DNA of 64,000 nt. It comes from Fimbriosthenelais zetlandica (taxonomy: Eukaryota). The position numbers were made by a program, and so were the translations under genes. The DNA is taken from positions 60,202,001 through 60,266,000 of the forward strand of contig OZ365109.1 of the NCBI GenBank assembly GCA_977030845.1. Reading direction: 5' to 3'. The notes below the pieces were generated by a model, which worked only from the letters and a program-made list of their open reading frames with translations, ran no database searches and had not been told where the DNA came from. Shown piece after piece: positions 40,505-52,365 of the stretch (position 1 is the first letter of the stretch; each line of letters starts with the position of its first letter).

Positions 40505-41205
40505 GTAAGCTTATTTATTTCAAATCTATTTTATTACAAATCAATTTTTTTTTATTATCTTATATGATGGCGAATTGTCATGTAAATTCATCATGCACAT
40601 GTATAGTTAAACATCAGAAAATTCTGTCACAGCAGCGAACGTCCAGTCCCTGTTGAGAAATATTAGAACTATCCTTACCGTTACATCTCTTTGCGTGAAG
40701 ATAGTTTCACCCACATTGTGTTATGGCTGCCGTGTCATATGGTTGTATCAAACATCTTAAAACACTCCCAAACTGGAATAATTATAAGATAATCAAGAGT
40801 ACAGGACAAAACCCCATATTGTACACTTATATGAACTGTATAAAGGTTGGTGACAACAGTGACAGAGTTGTCATGGCTGAAAACAAGAGGATTCAACACC
40901 CAACTCTCATGCCCATAGGCATAGGGCATAGGTGAGTGATGGTGACTGCATTGACCGTTGCTTAAAGTTAAAGCTGCTCTAACAGAAGTCTTGGATGAAA
41001 TTATCAAATGTGATTTTACAGGCTCATTTTTTGTATACAATTTAGCTACCTCATCAAGAATATACTATGATTTGTCCTATCAATCACCATACAAGTGTAA
41101 TTTTAACTATGATCACAAGATCTAGGTCAGAATGTAAGCCGACACTGTAAACATCAGGCCATCCGATGCTGCTCCACATTGAGTCAATTTCATTGATAAA
41201 TAAGC

Positions 41206-41388
41206 TGTTAAGCTAGCCATGATGGAGGAAAGGAAGACGTACAACACATGTGTCTTATCTAAAGCTTGGGACCCGAGAGAATGAGAGCTCCGCGTGGTCT
41301 TATCTTTTATTAGCAATAGTTACATACAAGCTCGTGTGGCGGCGCCACTATAAGTCAGACTAGTTATGAATGTTCACACCAGTTTACA
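41206..41388 (-). repeat. Copia 3' LTR (183 bp)
   Basis: No difference from 47933-48115 found by eye. Preceded on the minus strand by the PPT AAGTGGGGG (41389-41397). Confidence 0.96.
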
Positions 41389-41556
41389 CCCCCACTTGAA
41401 CATTTGATAACATGCTTCAAAAATTCATACAGAAACGTTTTCAGAAACTTCACATAACGTTTATCAGTTTATACAATCATGGAAATTTAACAATATATTA
41501 TACTGTCCGAAAGTGTATTCATTACAATTTAGAGTTTTGCAGTTATATAGACATAT

Positions 41557-41875
41557 TCAAAAACATTTATCATGATACTCTAACAACTTTTTCAGATAGC
41601 GTTTTTGACTCATTTTGACTTGATCATTTTCGACCTTGGATTCTATTCCTAAGAACCATGATAAGATTCCCAAGTCAGACATGTGGAATCTTTTCTTCAA
41701 CTTTGTTTTCACCTCAGACAACAAACATTCACTATCAGCAGCAAGTATTAAATCATCTAACCGGACCAACAATATAACATTACCTTGTCCATCGGTTCTG
41801 GTGTAGATGCACGCATCAACTTGTGATTGTACAAAATCATTTTGAGTTAGGTACTCTTTTAGAGTCCGATTCCAG
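41557..41875 (-). pseudogene. Copia RT distal fragment, truncated (no RNase H)
   Basis: Reads WNRTLKEYLTQNDFVQSQVDACIY...LLVRLDDLILA...MSDLGILSWFLGIE...SQKRYLKKLLEYHDKCF*. It resumes exactly where the long ORF is interrupted. The Y/WVDD motif appears as RLDD, and the frame stops before the end of RT. Confidence 0.9.
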
Positions 41876-44800
41876 CGTAATAGGCCTGTGGAACCTATAG
41901 ATACCTTGGTGTTTATTTTGACTGGTCAGGCATGGGGAAGGACATGGGATGGGGTTAACGCCCATGCACAAAGGATTCTGCACCTAGAGATAATGGGATC
42001 TTCTTATTATACAGTTATGAACTCTCATCTTAGGCCTATATCCAATTATTTTGCAACAGGTGCATGCACTTAAAGTAATGGCCCAACAATACAGGACACA
42101 ACGAATGTCCCACTGCATGCAGCCAAGCCTAATAGGGTGGCAGTCCAGTTACAGGAGCTTGTCGATCTATCTGTATAGATCTGAATAATAAACTGACAGC
42201 CGATTATGCAAAATAAAGAAACTGAAAACCATAACTACTCTGTTGGCCCATTGAAGAAAGTATTTTCAAATTGTTTTATACAAATCCTGTATAATATAGG
42301 CCTATTGAGTAGGCCTACTAGAATCTCTACATGTCTATTTTGGAAAGTGGGGCAAATGTTTGATAAAAACATAGTACTAGGCATACCCAAGAAGTCCCAT
42401 GGTACATAATGCTGCATAATGATGGTGGATTCCATATTCTACAAGCAATGACCATTTCCAAACATGAATAACCACCAGACAAAATCTTTCAATAGTAAAG
42501 TTTGTTGTGTACTTGTGACACATGTGAAAATTTACCAATGTAGACCTGCCAATATACCTTATTTAATCTACAAAACAAGATCCTTAACCAGTGGAACTTC
42601 AAACTGAAGCCATTGACATAGGCTATTTCGTGTGTGTGTCTATGGAGGCATATTTAAATAAAATGTGAAAAGAAGTGGTGTTTTGGGGAATTGGCGGTAT
42701 GCACAGCTACGCGAACCTGGCGGTATCGCTCATGTGCATACCTGTAGGGTTTTGTGTGAGCAGACATTTGTGACATGTTCTCATTAATGAATCTAAAGTT
42801 ACAAAAATTGATTTTGAGTGTTATAATGATATATATAATGACAAAATAACGCTTAGAGATGCGAAAAATAGTTATATAATTTCAATGAAATTTCAAGTAG
42901 TGAAAGCAGAAACTAGAATAAAAATCACTAGGAAACAAGAGAAAACGCACAAAGTTGAACCTTTCTCAATTTAACTCAGAAAAATAGTAAAGAAATTGTA
43001 TACTTGCTTTTAATGCAAAAATGCAAAGAGAAATAAATGCTTTCAGGCATGTAGCGCTGAAAGGGCCTGGAAAACTTTATACTCATTTAGTGAAAACGCT
43101 TCACATTTATTTAGAAACATTTTGACAACTAATTTTAATCATTGCTGACATGGGCAATGTACCAGGGATTTGTTAGCAATCAAATTCTGGCCAATACAAT
43201 TCCAATGGTACAATGAGGACTGCTGAACATGTGTTATGAACATGAATGGCATTTTATATGTATGATAATGATCATGAATATCAGAACTAAATTTATAATA
43301 TATAGAAAAGGTTGTGAGACTGAGGGTAAGTAGTTGAAGGCACATACAATATAGTCATCAGAGGCGGACAAGAGAGTAGTACAGAATATGTGAAGTAAGA
43401 AGCAGAGATCATACTGAGAAGTTGTGAAACACATAGGGATGGTGCAGGTAGAGAGGGGAAAGGGGGAGGAAGAGGAAGGGGGGGGGGGAGGGAAAGGGGG
43501 GGGGGGGGGGGAGGGAAAGGGGGGGGGGAAAGAGAAGGAGATAAGACACATCATTAAACCTCAATGAGTATAGGCTGTATATTCTAACCTAATTATGATA
43601 GGTAAAAGAGAAACATTTCTGAATTTCATTAAACCTACCAAATCAACTCATTCCTATATTTCCATCTGCTAATTATCAAAAGTACTTATGCAAAACAATC
43701 AATTATAATCTTTTCTGTCACCCGTTAGGCCAAGAAAATACCCTTGTTACTGGTACAAATATCAGTAACTTATTTGTAAATGCAGGCCCTGACATTGGTA
43801 TGTATAACAATGTCTCGTAACATAATTGTCATCAAACGCAAAGGCAATAGATTTGCTGTGGGTTAAGTGAATATGACAATTATATAGGGAATCAATGTGT
43901 GGATATTGACCATGGAAAGTGAGTTAAAAAAACAATTATTACAGTGCCGCCTCTTTATAAAATAAAATGCAACTGAAGATTTAAATTGTTCACATACAAT
44001 GGAGACTTTAGATTTTGTTTTTTCGTAAACCATACGATATATAGGAAAAAGACTATCTTGAATTAAATAGGGCATATTAGAGCAATGTCAAATGAATGAG
44101 TGGAGTTAGAATAGGCCTAGAAAAGGGAAAAAGAGATTGTATAGGCATGGTTAATTGTTTATAACATTGCCGAAAATTGTGTGTGACTGAAATTTAATTT
44201 AATGTGTATTATAGGGATATAGCAGTAGCAGGTTTACAAGATGCATGGCAGTAAAAAAAACATCGTGTAGATCATTGTTGCAAATATAGACGTACCAAAT
44301 GTGCGAATGGGAAGTCTATGGCGTATATATGCTGTGGTGGTTTTACCCTAAATGAATGACCCAATGTTTTTTCTCTATGTTGACCAGGCAAAATAAGCTT
44401 TAGGCTATGGAAGTTGTTGATACCCAATCACTGAGTTATAATTGTTTGAATGGAATTTTCACAGATCAGTGGTCACGGTTTGAAAACGAGACCCGGTAGG
44501 GGAGTAGGGGCAAGGTACTTGAAAGCAAAGTGGATGCCTATAATATATAGTCTATACCCGGGCTCTATGTCAAGGACAAGGCGAGGCTATGGATGCTTTA
44601 TAATGTTGCTTTTAGTACAGTAACTTCACCTTGTTTAATAAATGTCTTTAAAAGGATGTCTTTTTAAACATAAAATGCTGAGGAACAGTAAGACGGTGAA
44701 CATTGAGCACAAACATGCACACCCAGTTTAGTTGGAAGTACCCCATGGATTATATTGGTTGTGTTCGAGAACCGTCGTCCTAGTAGTAAATAGTAGTAAA

Positions 44801-45055
44801 ATATTAACAGTTTTATTTTGTCAATTTGTCATCTTTTGCTTCTGATAAATTTCTTAAAAATGGCATAAGATCCAATATAGGCAATGTTTAAATCATTTCA
44901 CGCGGAAAAAATACAACGTTAATGGGGAGATTATTGAGAAATCAGCATGGAAAGATGTCTACGTGTTTGAGTCTTTTTCCTTCTTAGCGTGGGGCCCTGA
45001 TTTGGGATTTGGTATACCTTGCAGGCCTACAGAGGCCTAACTGGGGCCGATTTGA
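41876..45055. other. 3180-bp unidentified insert inside the copia RT
   Basis: Flanked by CCAG on both sides (41872-41875, 45056-45059); removing it restores GRNW-NRTL. No TIR, LTR, poly(A) or long ORF seen. Confidence 0.85.
43447..43530 (+). repeat. G/A-rich tract with long G-runs
   Basis: GGGGAAAGGGGGAGG...G-runs. It gives the spurious poly-Pro ORF 43234-43554. Confidence 0.85.
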
Positions 45056-47947
45056 CCAGTTTCGACCACTTTGTTTCAATCCATAGAGAGACTTGTTTAG
45101 TCTCCACACACAGTTTACATCGTTACCAGTAGCTTCATAGCCTTTAGGCGGATCAATATATATTTCTTCTTCATTGGGTGCGTTCAAATAGGCTGTCTTC
45201 ACATCAAGCTGATGTACAATAAGATTGTTTTGGGCAGCCACCTGGGCTAATCCCCTTAGTGAGGTCATCTTTGCTTTTGGGCTGAAGGTTTCTTTATAAT
45301 CAATGCCCTCTACCTGACTATAACCTTTCGCAACATATCTGGCTTTATATCGCACCTCTTTACTTGCACCTTCTTTATCATTATACACCCATCGACCCCC
45401 CACTGTCTTCCTACCATCTGGTAAAGGGGTTACAGAGTAGGTGTCATTTTCCCTCAGAGACTCCATTTCTGTCTCCATGGCATCTCTCCAACAATTTGAG
45501 TCAATGGTTTCCACATAGGTTTGAGGTAGACCCAACACTTTATAACAATAATCAACATTACAATTTACCTTCTCACCGCTAACATAATCATCTAACCTTT
45601 TGGGCGGGCGCCTGTCTCTGGCGGGGTACCTTGCCTCCCTTACCTCTTGGTTACCTTGGGCTCCCTGCGCCTCGTTTCCCTGGTTTTCTACATTTTCATT
45701 TTGTTCATCGCGATCATAATTCTCAATTAACACATCTTCAATTGGCATAGGGGCATTGATAGGACCTTCTTCTATTATGTCAGTGAATCTGACGTTCCTG
45801 TATTTCTTTACATTTCCCGTATCTGGGTGATACACTAAGTATGCAGGGCTTCCCCTGTCGTATCCTACAAACCTTCCCTTTTTGCTTTTAGCATCCAACT
45901 TCTTCTTGTAATCATTATCATATGCATAACACACACTCCCGAATACATGCATCTTTGAAACATCTGGTTTCTTACCAACAAACATGGAAAATGGTGTCTG
46001 CTCTATACGTTGGTTGTAACATCTGTTTCTGATATAAGCAGATGCCATAACCGCATACGTCCACAGGTTTTTAGGCAACTTTGCCTCTAACAACATACAT
46101 CTGGCCATTTCAAAGAGTGTTCTCCATCCCCTTTCGGCCGAACCATTTTGGTGTGGTGAAAATGGTGCTGATGTCTCGTGTTTAATCTGATTTTTAATCA
46201 GTACATCTCTGAATTCTTTACATGTATACTCGGTACCGTTATCGCTTCTTACACATTTTATCTTGCCATATGGCGCACAATCAGCTAGGAAACGCTCTAA
46301 TGCTTTCACAGAATCACTTTTATGTTTCAAAAAGTATACAAAAATAATACCAGAAAAATCATCTGTAAAGGATATTGCGTACCTAAAGCCCTCTCTGGCT
46401 GTTGGATCAATTGGTCCAGCAAGGTCGGTGTGAACCATCTCGAGAATAGATGTAGCCCTTTGTCTCGGAATGCTACTTTGTGGGTTCGTTTGTTTTCCCA
46501 TGGCACATGTTTCACAGTTGAACTTTTCTTTACTAATACACATACCTTCTGATACCTTTTCAAGCTGTATGATATCAGGAACATTGCAATGTCCGAGGAT
46601 ATTATGCCATGTTTTCAAGTCGCAAACTCGGTTCACACAGTCAATAATTATGTCACTTTCACACTTCAAATAATATAGGCGTCCCTGCTGTTTTATAGCG
46701 AACTTGGTTCCATCTGGAGTCGTCATGTACGATTGTTCCTGTCTCAGTGTTACTATTGCTCCTTTCTGTGTCGCCACTTGCACAGAGAATATGTTGTGTG
46801 GATATGTCGGGATGTAGAGTGCATTTTGGAGGGTTATTTTCACATGTCTACCTTTATCGTTTTGTATCACTACCATGGCGTCTCCCCGCTTCATGGCTAC
46901 ATTATTGGTCCTACTACCGTCAGCCAGTTCGATGTAATGTTCACTAGGTAGAAAGGAATTATCAAAACGTGTGAAAAGAGACTCATCTGTAACAATGTGG
47001 GTTGTGGCGCCACAATCAACTAGTAGTGAATATTTGTTGTTTGAAACATCCGTTGAATTCAGTTTGAACACAAACGAATGACTATCACTCGTGTCTGCCA
47101 CACTGCCTCCATCTCCTACTACTTTTGCCCTATCAGTCGTTCTCCCGCCATGTGCGTTCTGCCCGCCATGTGCGTTCTGCCATCTACACGACTGGTCTGT
47201 GTGGTTAGAGCGTTTACACCAGCTACACCACATGCTCTTCCCGTACTGTTTCTGATTTTGTCCACAGTTCATGGCCATGTGGCCGTATTTCCTACATTTA
47301 TAACACTGTCTATTATTTCTCTTTGACTCCGCATTCATAACACTGTCCTCAGTGACGGATCTTGCCGTCTCTGTATCTTCATAGCTTCTTAGCATGACTT
47401 TAAATTCTTGGAACGACACTTCTCTCTCCCTTTGTGTTACAACAACTACAAACGACTTGTATCTATCAGGCAGGCCTTTTAGAACCATTGCTGTTAACAG
47501 GCTATCACTCACCAGTTCACCAGTATTTCTTAGTGCTGTGGCGGCCTTCTCTGCTTTGATGATGTAGTCGGTGATGGATTCATCCGATCCTTTAACTAGG
47601 GAAGTCAGTTCCGTATATAGCGCGATAATCCTGGGTTTTCCTGTACCCGCATAATGTGCCCTCAATATGGCCATCGCTCTCCTTCCATCGTCAGCTGCAT
47701 CCCTCATAACCAACGACAGGCTTCTATCATCTAGGAACTGTATTAGCTCGGCAAAGGCTTCTTCGTTTTTGGCGGCAAATCCTTCTGGCTCCACAGCATT
47801 GGTTTCCAGTTGAATAGTTTCCTTTAATTTCCTGAGCTTCATGTATCCTAGGAACTTGCTCTCCCATAGCTCGTATTTCTGTTCATCTCCATCGAAAAAT
47901 AATCTGCTCCAGCGGTTGCTGGGCCCATAACCTGTTAAGCTAGCCAT
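45056..47947 (-). CDS. Copia gag-pol polyprotein (gag, two CCHC knuckles, protease, integrase, N-terminal RT), interrupted at 45056
   Basis: Likely start MASLTGYGPSNRW (ATG 47947). CYKCRKYGHMAMNC and CSWCKRSNHTDQSC knuckles; protease LVDCGATTHI; WHNILGH...CETC; integrase HTDLAGP, SDNGTEY, NGSAER; RT YKARYVAKGYSQVEGIDY, QLDVKTAYLN, SLYGLKQSGRNW. No stops across ~960 codons. Confidence 0.95.
47918..47932 (-). other. Primer-binding site complementary to the 5' half of tRNAiMet
   Basis: Minus strand GGTTATGGGCCCAGC directly follows the 5' LTR. The plus strand GCTGGGCCCATAACC matches the anticodon-arm region of initiator tRNA-Met, the PBS type known from Drosophila copia. Confidence 0.9.
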
Positions 47948-48115
47948 GATGGAGGAAAGGAAGACGTACAACACATGTGTCTTATCTAAAGCTTGGGACC
48001 CGAGAGAATGAGAGCTCCGCGTGGTCTTATCTTTTATTAGCAATAGTTACATACAAGCTCGTGTGGCGGCGCCACTATAAGTCAGACTAGTTATGAATGT
48101 TCACACCAGTTTACA
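47933..48115 (-). repeat. Copia 5' LTR (183 bp)
   Basis: TGTAAACTGG...GCTAGCTTAACA on the minus strand; contains the gag ATG. Confidence 0.96.
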
Positions 48116-48438
48116 TAAGCAATCAAAACTGTCTAAAATCATACAAATTAATGATAAGTGAGACTGAACCTGATTGAACTGTGAAGAATTTACTGGTATA
48201 TTCATGTCATATCTGGTGTGGGACAGTAGGCCTATATAGAGTAGCGATGACGGACGAGCGGCCGCGAACCCGCTTGCTATTCTGTCAAGTGCTAAACTGT
48301 CAATAAGTTTGTGTCACACTCAGAGCTTCAAACTCTCTATTTCCTCCTTCTAAATAGTGTACTAGGGGTAGAAATACCTGGATAATTGATTTCTGGCATA
48401 AGAATCGGGGTTTTTTTGTACATAAACTGTAGTAATTG

Positions 48439-52284: not shown

Positions 52285-52365
52285 AAAAAGTATTGCCAGG
52301 CAGGGAATCGAACCCTGGTCTCTAGAGTTCCATGCCAGTGTCTTACCCCTGGCCTACCTGGGGCG
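52285..52365 (-). ncRNA. tRNA-derived Pol III cassette
   Basis: Minus strand GGTAGGCCAGGGGTAAGACACT...GGTTCGATTCCC, then TTTTT. Confidence 0.7.

What the first reader, a model, noticed from the sequence alone, without database searches (positions are those of the whole stretch)
41206..48115. Freshly inserted copia that cannot replicate itself: identical LTRs and intact gag-PR-IN, but three separate RT/RNase H lesions
Seen: the LTRs look identical (183/183 by eye), the TSD is perfect, and ~960 codons of gag-PR-IN-RT carry no stop. Yet RT has a 3.18-kb insert, the catalytic motif reads RLDD, and the RT end plus RNase H are deleted. Known: LTRs are identical at integration. Inference: so many RT-specific lesions are unlikely to post-date a very recent insertion. 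This may be a non-autonomous lineage that keeps particle and integration functions and borrows RT in trans.
Basis: partly seen in the sequence, partly recalled or inferred. Interest (0 to 1): 0.72.

Follow-up and report, generated by a model that had tools for sequence, protein, structure and literature searches.

The report
Semi-autonomous copia hit by nested repeat
This is a young copy of a small copia retrotransposon family whose members have all lost RNase H and changed the reverse-transcriptase active site yet kept spreading, and the 3.18-kb "insert" is a later, private insertion of an unrelated repeat; this kind of semi-autonomous element is already known.

Summary
A minus-strand Ty1/copia element lies at 41206-48115. 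It has identical 183-bp LTRs, a GCTTA target duplication and 964 stop-free codons. RT is interrupted by a 3,180-bp insert, reads RLDD, and ends with no RNase H.

The three lesions have different histories:
- **RNase H/RT-end deletion:** present in all 8 internal-bearing genomic copies. The five complete copies checked each have their own 5-bp target duplication.
- **RLDD:** present in all young copies. The clade's normal motif is WVDD (115 of 120 relatives), not YVDD. An older copy (about 94% identical) has the deletion but still reads W-V, so the deletion came first and RT eroded afterwards.
- **The insert:** private to this copy. Sibling copies show the exact empty site. The insert belongs to an unrelated dispersed repeat family of at least 25 copies.

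At clade-conserved columns gag and PR show no departures (0 of 91). RT shows 8 of 85, more than any of 67 relatives.

No matching full-length partner exists in this assembly. The only intact copia is about 38% identical. The non-autonomous reading is therefore supported, trans-complementation is inferred, and the helper is unidentified. This is a new member of a known kind.

The parts
41201..41205 (-). Target-site duplication, downstream copy in element sense (GCTTA; TAAGC on + strand)
   Evidence: the same 5 nt flank both LTRs.
41206..41388 (-). 3' LTR (183 bp, TG...CA)
   Evidence: 183/183 identical to 47933-48115.
41389..41397 (-). Polypurine tract AAGTGGGGG abutting the 3' LTR
   Evidence: Read directly. 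The same 9-mer abuts the LTR of the 50%-identical relative L034.
41398..41556 (-). Non-coding stretch between the stop codon and the PPT, where RNase H would be in relatives
   Evidence: tblastn with the C-terminal 330 aa of 67 full-length relatives found only RT-end matches just upstream of and around the stop codon, and no RNase H remnant.
41557..41871 (-). RT distal piece (104 codons plus stop). The catalytic motif reads RLDD at 41752-41763
   Evidence: In the uninterrupted sibling L002, RVT_2 is matched over positions 1-228 of 244.
41872..41875 (-). CTGG (CCAG on + strand), second copy of the tetranucleotide at the insert border
   Evidence: the empty site in L002, L003, L005 and L031 has a single CTGG.
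41876..45055 (-). Nested 3,180-bp insertion of an unrelated, non-coding dispersed repeat. Not part of the copia lineage
   Evidence: at least 25 dispersed copies at 93-98% identity; ends conserved in about 20 copies with unrelated flanks; no long ORF, no Rfam match, no TIR or LTR.
45056..45448 (-). RT proximal piece (RVT_2 profile 1-132), ending in the first CTGG
   Evidence: (RVT_2, E 4.9e-44).
45782..46681 (-). Integrase (pre-integrase zinc region, rve core, SH3-like domain)
   Evidence: The HHCC and D,D,E residues can be read.
46760..47023 (-). Protease-region beta-barrel domain
   Evidence: Pol_BBD, E 7.7e-11. 0 of 27 departures at clade-conserved columns.
47024..47947 (-). gag (copia-type gag domain and zinc knuckles). 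The ATG at 47945-47947 lies inside the 5' LTR
   Evidence: 0 of 64 departures at clade-conserved columns.
47918..47932 (-). Primer-binding site, complementary to the anticodon stem-loop of a tRNA-Met(CAT) gene of the same genome. It is translated as part of gag
   Evidence: its exact 15-nt complement spans the anticodon of ARAGORN-called tRNA-Met genes in L042.
47933..48115 (-). 5' LTR (183 bp)
48116..48120 (-). Target-site duplication, upstream copy in element sense

Best explanation
The element is a young copy of a low-copy, semi-autonomous Ty1/copia family of about 3.73 kb. An ancestor lost the RT end and the whole RNase H domain in an internal deletion. Its descendants kept transposing and kept an open gag-PR-IN reading frame. 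On that lineage the leftover RT then eroded, including the catalytic motif (W-V in the old copy, R-L in the young ones). The family makes its own capsid, protease and integrase and must get reverse transcription and RNase H from another element. That last step is inferred. After this copy integrated, an unrelated 3.18-kb non-coding repeat inserted into its RT remnant. That event is private to this locus and unrelated to the family's defect.
For: - **Deletion is family-wide:** all 8 internal-bearing copies have the same short 3' structure. They are the window copy, C13:6.10M, C1:18.69M, C10:11.95M, C11:33.97M, C1:48.02M, C11:41.25M and the old C10:14.05M.
- **Independent insertions:** the five complete copies have different perfect 5-bp target duplications and 0-2 LTR mismatches.
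- **Open frames:** two siblings carry uninterrupted 1,067-1,069-codon ORFs in which RVT_2 stops at position 228 of 244.
- **RLDD is shared:** it is read in 6 of 6 young copies. The C1:48.02M copy was not read directly; its RT region is 100% identical in protein to C13.
- **Clade norm:** 115 of 120 relatives read WVDD.
- **Order of events:** the old copy L036 has the same deletion junction but still reads W-V. It also keeps the clade-conserved T, I and F at three other RT positions that are changed in the young copies.
- **Domain contrast:** departures at columns conserved in at least 90% of relatives are gag 0/64, PR 0/27, IN 4/103 and RT 8/85. The RT value exceeds all 67 relatives (Fisher p = 0.023).
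- **Selection on the active lineage:** substitutions shared among copies are 14 nonsynonymous to 18 synonymous, omega about 0.2, p = 1e-5.
- **Insert is private:** it is absent from every other copia copy, the exact empty site is present in siblings, and it matches at least 25 dispersed copies end to end.
Against: - No matching full-length (RNase H-bearing) element was found. The extra DNA in the C11:33.97M copy is two other nested repeats, and the three additional family LTRs that were fetched are solo LTRs.
- The nearest RNase H-bearing relatives are about 50% identical and broken (L034).
- The only intact copia is about 38% identical, with a YVDD motif and a different PPT.
- Inactivity of an R-L-D-D polymerase is inferred, not measured.
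- The within-family dN/dS comparison of RT against gag/IN has no power.
- The conserved-column excess in RT is modest (p about 0.02).
- A single assembly cannot show that the insert post-dates integration. A parent copy carrying it may simply not be assembled.
Confidence: 0.8

Rival explanations
1. Recurrent-deletion model. A full-length master, not assembled here, repeatedly gives rise to the same short form, for example by reverse transcription of a spliced or template-switched RNA. The short copies would then be dead-on-arrival by-products rather than a self-propagating defective lineage.
For: All copies share one deletion junction, which a fixed splice or switch point would also produce. 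Subgenomic spliced RNAs are known for Drosophila copia (own knowledge). No master can be excluded from a single assembly.
Against: The young copies share derived, radical changes in the RT remnant (R-L and three other conserved columns) that the old short copy lacks. A functional master would have to carry these too. No full-length relative above 50% identity, and no matching RNase H fragment, was found in a 447-Mb, 79-contig assembly. Mosaic sharing of variants among short copies (all four combinations at element positions 985 and 1876) fits recombination among co-packaged short RNAs.
Confidence: 0.08
2. The family is still autonomous. An R-L-D-D polymerase works, and RNase H activity is dispensable or supplied by a host enzyme.
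For: RVT_2 still scores 236 bits over 228 of 244 profile positions in uninterrupted siblings. Both catalytic aspartates are kept. No helper was found.
Against: None of 120 relatives has a non-aromatic residue at the first motif position. RT carries more departures at conserved columns than any of 67 relatives. LTR-element replication needs RNase H to make the PPT primer and remove the tRNA primer (established knowledge). About 246 residues are missing.
Confidence: 0.05
3. All three lesions, the insert included, were inherited from a parent copy. The 6.9-kb composite would then be the transposing unit.
For: The LTRs are identical and the copy has only 2 private substitutions, leaving little time for a secondary hit.
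Against: No second composite copy or junction exists in the genome. Four of the 8 family copies carry nested insertions of different repeats at different sites, so secondary hits are frequent here. The insert family is itself young, with copies 96-98% alike.
Confidence: 0.05

Closest known systems
Semi-autonomous LTR retrotransposons of cereals (RLG_Sabrina_SA, RLG_WHAM), described in PMC9744471
   Same: Whole families keep part of the coding capacity (GAG-protease there, gag-PR-IN here) and lack RT function. They are thought to be cross-mobilised by another family with little sequence homology.
   Different: Those are plant gypsy elements with thousands of copies that lack RT and IN entirely. 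This is an animal copia family of about 8 copies that keeps IN and an eroding RT remnant, and its partner is unidentified.
BARE2 (barley) and Tos17 (rice), non-autonomous copia elements with partial coding capacity (PMC9744471; PMC3977881)
   Same: Copia elements that have lost one essential function, still transpose, and are presumed to be complemented in trans.
   Different: BARE2 and Tos17 lack gag function and keep pol. Here the defect is the reverse: RT and RNase H are lost while gag, PR and IN are kept. BARE2 has an obvious close partner (BARE1); none is seen here.
Marine-animal copia lineages (GalEa, Hydra, CoMol, CoMar clades; PMC3587641, PMC11889832)
   Same: Short LTRs, a total size of about 4-5 kb, and hosts that are aquatic animals. 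The nearest database proteins that carry an organism name come from a coral, fishes and a clam-symbiont metagenome bin.
   Different: The PBS differs from the GalEa PBS quoted in PMC3587641. The clade here has WVDD and a PBS matching the tRNA-Met anticodon stem-loop. The clade name was not determined.
Helitron / IS91-type rolling-circle transposons (for the 3.18-kb insert only)
   Same: No TIR, no LTR, no poly(A) and no true target duplication. The ends are 5'-TC and 3'-CTGG (CTRR). Every copy sits immediately 3' of a CTNG tetranucleotide, as IS91 does next to CTTG/GTTC (own knowledge).
   Different: The canonical A|T target is not met, no convincing subterminal hairpin is present, and no Rep/helicase-bearing relative was looked for. 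The class is left open.

Membership tests
Ty1/copia LTR retrotransposon | Domain order gag - protease - integrase - reverse transcriptase | tested here: met
   Retrotran_gag_2, Pol_BBD, gag_pre-integrs, rve, SH3_retrovirus and RVT_2, in that order.
Ty1/copia LTR retrotransposon | Direct LTRs ending TG...CA, flanked by a 5-bp target duplication | tested here: met
   identical 183-bp LTRs with a GCTTA duplication. Four sibling copies have their own 5-bp duplications.
Ty1/copia LTR retrotransposon | PBS next to the 5' LTR complementary to a host tRNA, and a PPT next to the 3' LTR | tested here: met
   the PBS complement lies across the anticodon of tRNA-Met(CAT) genes of the same genome. The PPT AAGTGGGGG is read.
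Ty1/copia LTR retrotransposon | RNase H domain downstream of RT (needed for autonomy) | tested here: not met
   68 residues follow the start of the motif, against a median of 314. No RNase H remnant lies before the PPT.
Non-autonomous / semi-autonomous LTR retrotransposon family | The defective form itself has transposed repeatedly | tested here: met
   8 copies share the same deletion. The five complete copies have distinct target duplications and near-identical LTR pairs.
Non-autonomous / semi-autonomous LTR retrotransposon family | Retained genes stay under constraint while the lost function decays | tested here: met
   gag 0/64, PR 0/27, IN 4/103 and RT 8/85 departures at conserved columns; shared substitutions have omega about 0.2. 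RT changes arose after the deletion. Statistical support is modest (p about 0.02).
Non-autonomous / semi-autonomous LTR retrotransposon family | An autonomous partner in the same genome that shares cis signals | tested here: inconclusive
   no matching full-length element. The intact L037-type copia shares the PBS type but not the PPT and is about 38% identical. The relative that shares the PPT (L034) is broken.
LARD / TRIM (non-coding non-autonomous LTR elements) | No coding capacity between the LTRs | tested here: not met
   sibling copies carry a 1,067-1,069-codon gag-PR-IN-RT ORF.
Helitron (the 3.18-kb insert) | 5'-TC and 3'-CTRR ends, with no TIR and no target duplication | tested here: met
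   ends TCAAATCGG... and ...TTACGCTGG in all of the roughly 20 copies read at both ends. The flanks are unrelated and there is no TIR.
Helitron (the 3.18-kb insert) | Insertion between host A and T, and a GC-rich hairpin 10-12 nt from the 3' end | tested here: not met
   the 5' neighbour is always CTNG and the 3' neighbour is mostly A. Only 6-nt palindromes lie near the ends, with no stem-loop at the canonical distance.

The most novel reading that the evidence does not exclude
The family has been propagating, up to very recently, with no matching partner. Its reverse transcription and RNase H would come from a copia of a different clade (about 38-50% protein identity), while its own Gag, protease and integrase stay indispensable. 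A variant of this reading is that the truncated, catalytically altered RT is kept as a structural subunit of a mixed polymerase. Either would be cross-clade complementation of the polymerase alone in an animal LTR element.
Probability: 0.22. Interest if true: 0.65.

Novelty: new member of a known kind. Interest (0 to 1): 0.38.

Why it matters
Partly coding non-autonomous LTR elements are well described in plants, but mostly as gag-defective or fully non-coding forms. Here the order of decay can be read from natural copies: RNase H was lost first, then the RT active site changed, while gag, PR and IN stayed clean. This is a clear animal example of an LTR element moving from autonomy to dependence. 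The lack of a matching helper in a chromosome-scale assembly makes the question of who supplies the polymerase testable with population data. For annotation, the practical point is that identical LTRs plus a long ORF do not mean autonomy. A large 'lesion' inside a young element can also be an ordinary nested insertion.

Tried and rejected
- **Full-length candidate (C11:33.97M):** its two extra segments (about 0.53 and 0.69 kb) are other dispersed repeats nested in the same short form.
- **LTR census for a partner sharing only LTRs:** the three near-identical extra LTRs I fetched are solo LTRs with their own duplications. Two sit in duplicated flanks.
- **Large protein search for a close full-length relative:** the best hit is about 53-59% identical. 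The family's own ORF is not in that collection either, so absence there says nothing about this species.
- **dN/dS by domain within the family:** there are too few substitutions to separate RT from gag/IN. RT between the old and young copies gives 0.64, not distinguishable from 1.
- **GalEa clade membership:** the GalEa PBS quoted in PMC3587641 differs from the PBS here. The clade is left unnamed.
- **Rfam scan of the element and insert:** no match at E <= 0.1.
- **Internal repeats of the insert:** only one low-complexity G-rich tract.
- **Canonical Helitron assignment of the insert:** the target rule and the hairpin are not met.
- **RNase H remnant in the 168 nt before the PPT:** none found.
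- **Procedural note:** a script joined the two flanks of the window copy in memory to measure distances. I deleted those files and did all later comparisons on separate pieces.
Full report
**What is at the coordinates**

The region holds one Ty1/copia LTR retrotransposon on the minus strand.
- The two LTRs (41206-41388 and 47933-48115) are identical over all 183 nt. They run TG...CA and are flanked by a perfect 5-bp duplication, GCTTA in element sense.
- The reading frame starts at an ATG inside the 5' LTR (47947). It runs through the primer-binding site and stays open for 964 codons to the insert junction at 45056. It then reads 24 codons into the insert before a stop.
- Pfam finds copia gag, the protease-region beta-barrel, pre-integrase, the integrase core, the SH3-like domain, and RVT_2 positions 1-132.
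- RT resumes at 41871 for 104 codons, reads R-L-D-D at 41763-41752, and stops at 41559-41557. A non-coding stretch and the polypurine tract AAGTGGGGG then lead into the 3' LTR.

**The insert**

I searched the whole element against its own 447-Mb assembly. The query splits into three parts:
- the copia 5' part;
- a 3.18-kb middle part that matches at least 25 dispersed loci at 93-98% identity;
- the copia 3' part.

Sibling copia copies join the 5' and 3' parts directly. The empty site reads ...GAAACTGG|AATCGG..., and the window copy has CTGG on both sides of a 3,180-bp insertion at 41876-45055. No other copia copy carries the insert.

About 20 copies of the insert family were read at both ends. 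They share the same ends and have unrelated flanks. Each sits immediately 3' of a CT[A/T/G]G tetranucleotide and ends in ...TTACGCTGG. The insert has no long ORF, TIR, LTR, poly(A) or Rfam match.

It is a non-autonomous repeat of unresolved class. Its ends resemble a rolling-circle element (5'-TC, 3'-CTGG, no true target duplication), but the canonical Helitron target and hairpin are not met. The insert is a private nested insertion, not a family trait.

**The deletion and RLDD are family traits**

Eight copies with internal sequence exist in the assembly:
- the window copy;
- C13:6.10M (L002);
- C1:18.69M (L003);
- C10:11.95M (L005);
- C11:33.97M (L031);
- C1:48.02M (L032);
- C11:41.25M (L033 and L035);
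- an older, degraded copy at C10:14.05M (L036).

All have the same short 3' structure. The five complete copies are 3.72-3.73 kb once nested repeats are set aside. Each has its own perfect 5-bp duplication (GCTTA, ATAAA, TGTTC, GACCC, ATATA). Their LTR pairs differ at 0, 0, 2, 1 and 1 positions.

Two siblings carry uninterrupted ORFs of 1,069 and 1,067 codons, in which RVT_2 is matched to position 228 of 244. Relatives have a median of 314 residues from the catalytic motif to the C-terminus; the family has 68. No RNase H remnant is detectable before the PPT.

RLDD, with the same codons, is read in all six young copies examined. The C1:48.02M copy is 100% identical in protein to C13 over this region.

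**The native motif is WVDD, and the deletion came first**

Among 120 database relatives (at most 59% identical), 115 read WVDD at this position, 2 YVDD and 1 FVDD; the other two (one WVDE, one offset in its alignment) also carry the tryptophan. The 50%-identical relative in this genome (L034) also reads WVDD and has an RNase H domain.

The old copy L036 has the same deletion junction. It still reads W-V at the motif, and it keeps the clade-conserved T, I and F at three other RT positions where all young copies read K, N and S. So the RT end and RNase H were lost while the polymerase motif was still native. The RT remnant eroded later, on a lineage that went on to insert at least seven more times.

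**Which parts are still constrained**

I compared the family with 67 full-length relatives at columns conserved in at least 90% of them. Only changes shared by three family copies were counted.

| Domain | Departures / conserved columns | Comparison with relatives |
|---|---|---|
| gag | 0 / 64 | none |
| PR | 0 / 27 | none |
| IN | 4 / 103 | ordinary: 21 of 67 relatives are as high or higher |
| RT | 8 / 85 | higher than every one of the 67 relatives |

- Fisher's test of RT against all other domains (including the gag-to-RT linker, 1/13) gives p = 0.023.
- Substitutions shared by two or more copies are 14 nonsynonymous to 18 synonymous. That is omega about 0.2, p = 1e-5 against neutrality. 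Private ones give about 0.5.
- The within-family data cannot separate RT from the other domains.
- RT between old and young copies gives 0.64, not distinguishable from 1.
- Variant sharing among copies is mosaic, with all four combinations at element positions 985 and 1876. This fits recombination between co-packaged RNAs.

**Who supplies RT and RNase H**

I found no matching full-length element.
- The extra DNA in the C11:33.97M copy is two other nested repeats.
- A census with the LTR found the known copies, one 90%-identical old remnant, and further LTRs. The three I fetched are solo LTRs.
- Protein searches of the genome show the next relatives at about 50% identity and broken: L034 has an in-frame stop, split ORFs and a truncated 3' LTR.
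- The only intact copia lineage is about 38% identical. It has 5 copies with 1,262-1,313-codon frames. L037 has identical 205-bp LTRs and a YVDD motif.
- All three lineages share the PBS core GGTTATGGGCCCAG. Its complement lies across the anticodon of tRNA-Met(CAT) genes of this genome, so priming is of the internal-tRNA type known from Drosophila copia (own knowledge).
- The family's PPT is identical to that of the broken WVDD relative and differs from that of the intact YVDD element.

Trans-complementation is thus inferred from the anatomy and the repeated transposition of the defective form. The helper is either a matching element missing from this assembly or a heterologous copia.

**Age**

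Zero differences in 183 nt bound LTR divergence only below about 1.6%. The copy has just 2 private substitutions in about 3.7 kb and is 0.56% from its nearest sibling, so it is among the youngest. Four of the 8 family copies carry nested insertions of different repeats. A secondary hit in a young copy is therefore not surprising in this genome.

**Comparison with what is known**

Semi-autonomous and partly coding non-autonomous LTR elements are established:
- RLG_Sabrina_SA and RLG_WHAM encode only GAG-protease and are thought to be cross-mobilised by a family with little homology (PMC9744471).
- BARE2 has a disrupted gag (PMC9744471).
- Tos17 lacks gag (PMC3977881).

This family is the mirror case in an animal copia clade, so it is a new member of a known kind. 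Membership in GalEa was considered and dropped because the PBS differs (PMC3587641).

**Limits**

- The organism was not identified. It is an animal genome and not human-like.
- Polymerase inactivity, dependence on a helper and the timing of the insert are inferences.
- Misassembly cannot be excluded without reads, though clean junctions to a known repeat with an exact empty site argue against it.
- In one search a script briefly joined the two flanks of the window copy to compute distances. The files were deleted, and later work kept the pieces apart.

Noticed in passing
window 41872-45059; loci L006-L030: Every copy of the 3.2-kb insert family read at its 5' end lies immediately 3' of a CT[A/T/G]G tetranucleotide, and all copies end in ...TTACGCTGG, mostly followed by A. 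There is no TIR and no real target duplication. This looks like rolling-circle (IS91/Helitron-like) targeting, but the canonical Helitron A|T rule and hairpin are not met.
   Followed up: partly
L005 (C10:11.95M copy, RT region, element position about 3143); L036:3420-3435: There are 6-7-bp insertions of the form TA-GGCC(C)-TA at TA sites inside copia copies (GGCCTA in L005, GGCCCTA in L036). Another reader saw the same TAGGCCTA in a different copia (s1-188417). They look like excision footprints of a TA-targeting cut-and-paste transposon.
   Followed up: partly
G000:C1:32.87-32.90 Mb and 33.26-33.31 Mb (L042, L043): Long tandem arrays with a period of about 1.27 kb carry tRNA-Gly(GCC), tRNA-Asp(GTC) and tRNA-Met(CAT). 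There are dozens of units. The tRNA-Met anticodon stem-loop is the complement of the copia PBS.
   Followed up: partly
L037 (G000:C13:24277428-24282345): An intact 4.9-kb copia of another clade: identical 205-bp LTRs, an AACTC duplication, a single ORF of about 1,280 codons, a YVDD motif and a full RNase H. Four more copies have 1,262-1,313-codon frames. It is probably active.
   Followed up: partly
L031:4787-5474 and L031:4122-4651: Two small repeats are nested in the C11:33.97M family copy. One is a 0.69-kb element with CTGCCCTGTG terminal inverted repeats and a GAATA duplication, present in at least 35 copies at 94-100% identity. The other is a 0.53-kb element with an A/C-rich tail and a duplication of about 12-13 bp (SINE/LINE-like).
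   Followed up: partly
window 47918-47947; L034:664-700: The gag start codon lies inside the 5' LTR and the PBS is translated (M-A-S-L-T-G-Y-G-P...). The 50%-identical relative has the same layout.
   Followed up: no
G000:C11:8755108-8756087: In a degenerate relative (55-75% protein identity), an integrase C-terminal match directly abuts an RNase H match. This may be a different derivative that has lost RT.
   Followed up: no
L038 and L039 (G000:C29:13.00M and C33:0.56M): Two solo LTRs of the family share the same TAGGC duplication and nearly the same flanks, so the solo LTR lies inside a duplicated segment or another repeat.
   Followed up: no
window 52293-52363: ARAGORN calls a tRNA-Ser(GGA) on the minus strand, inside the palindromic region that another note (s1-203959) flags.
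   Followed up: no
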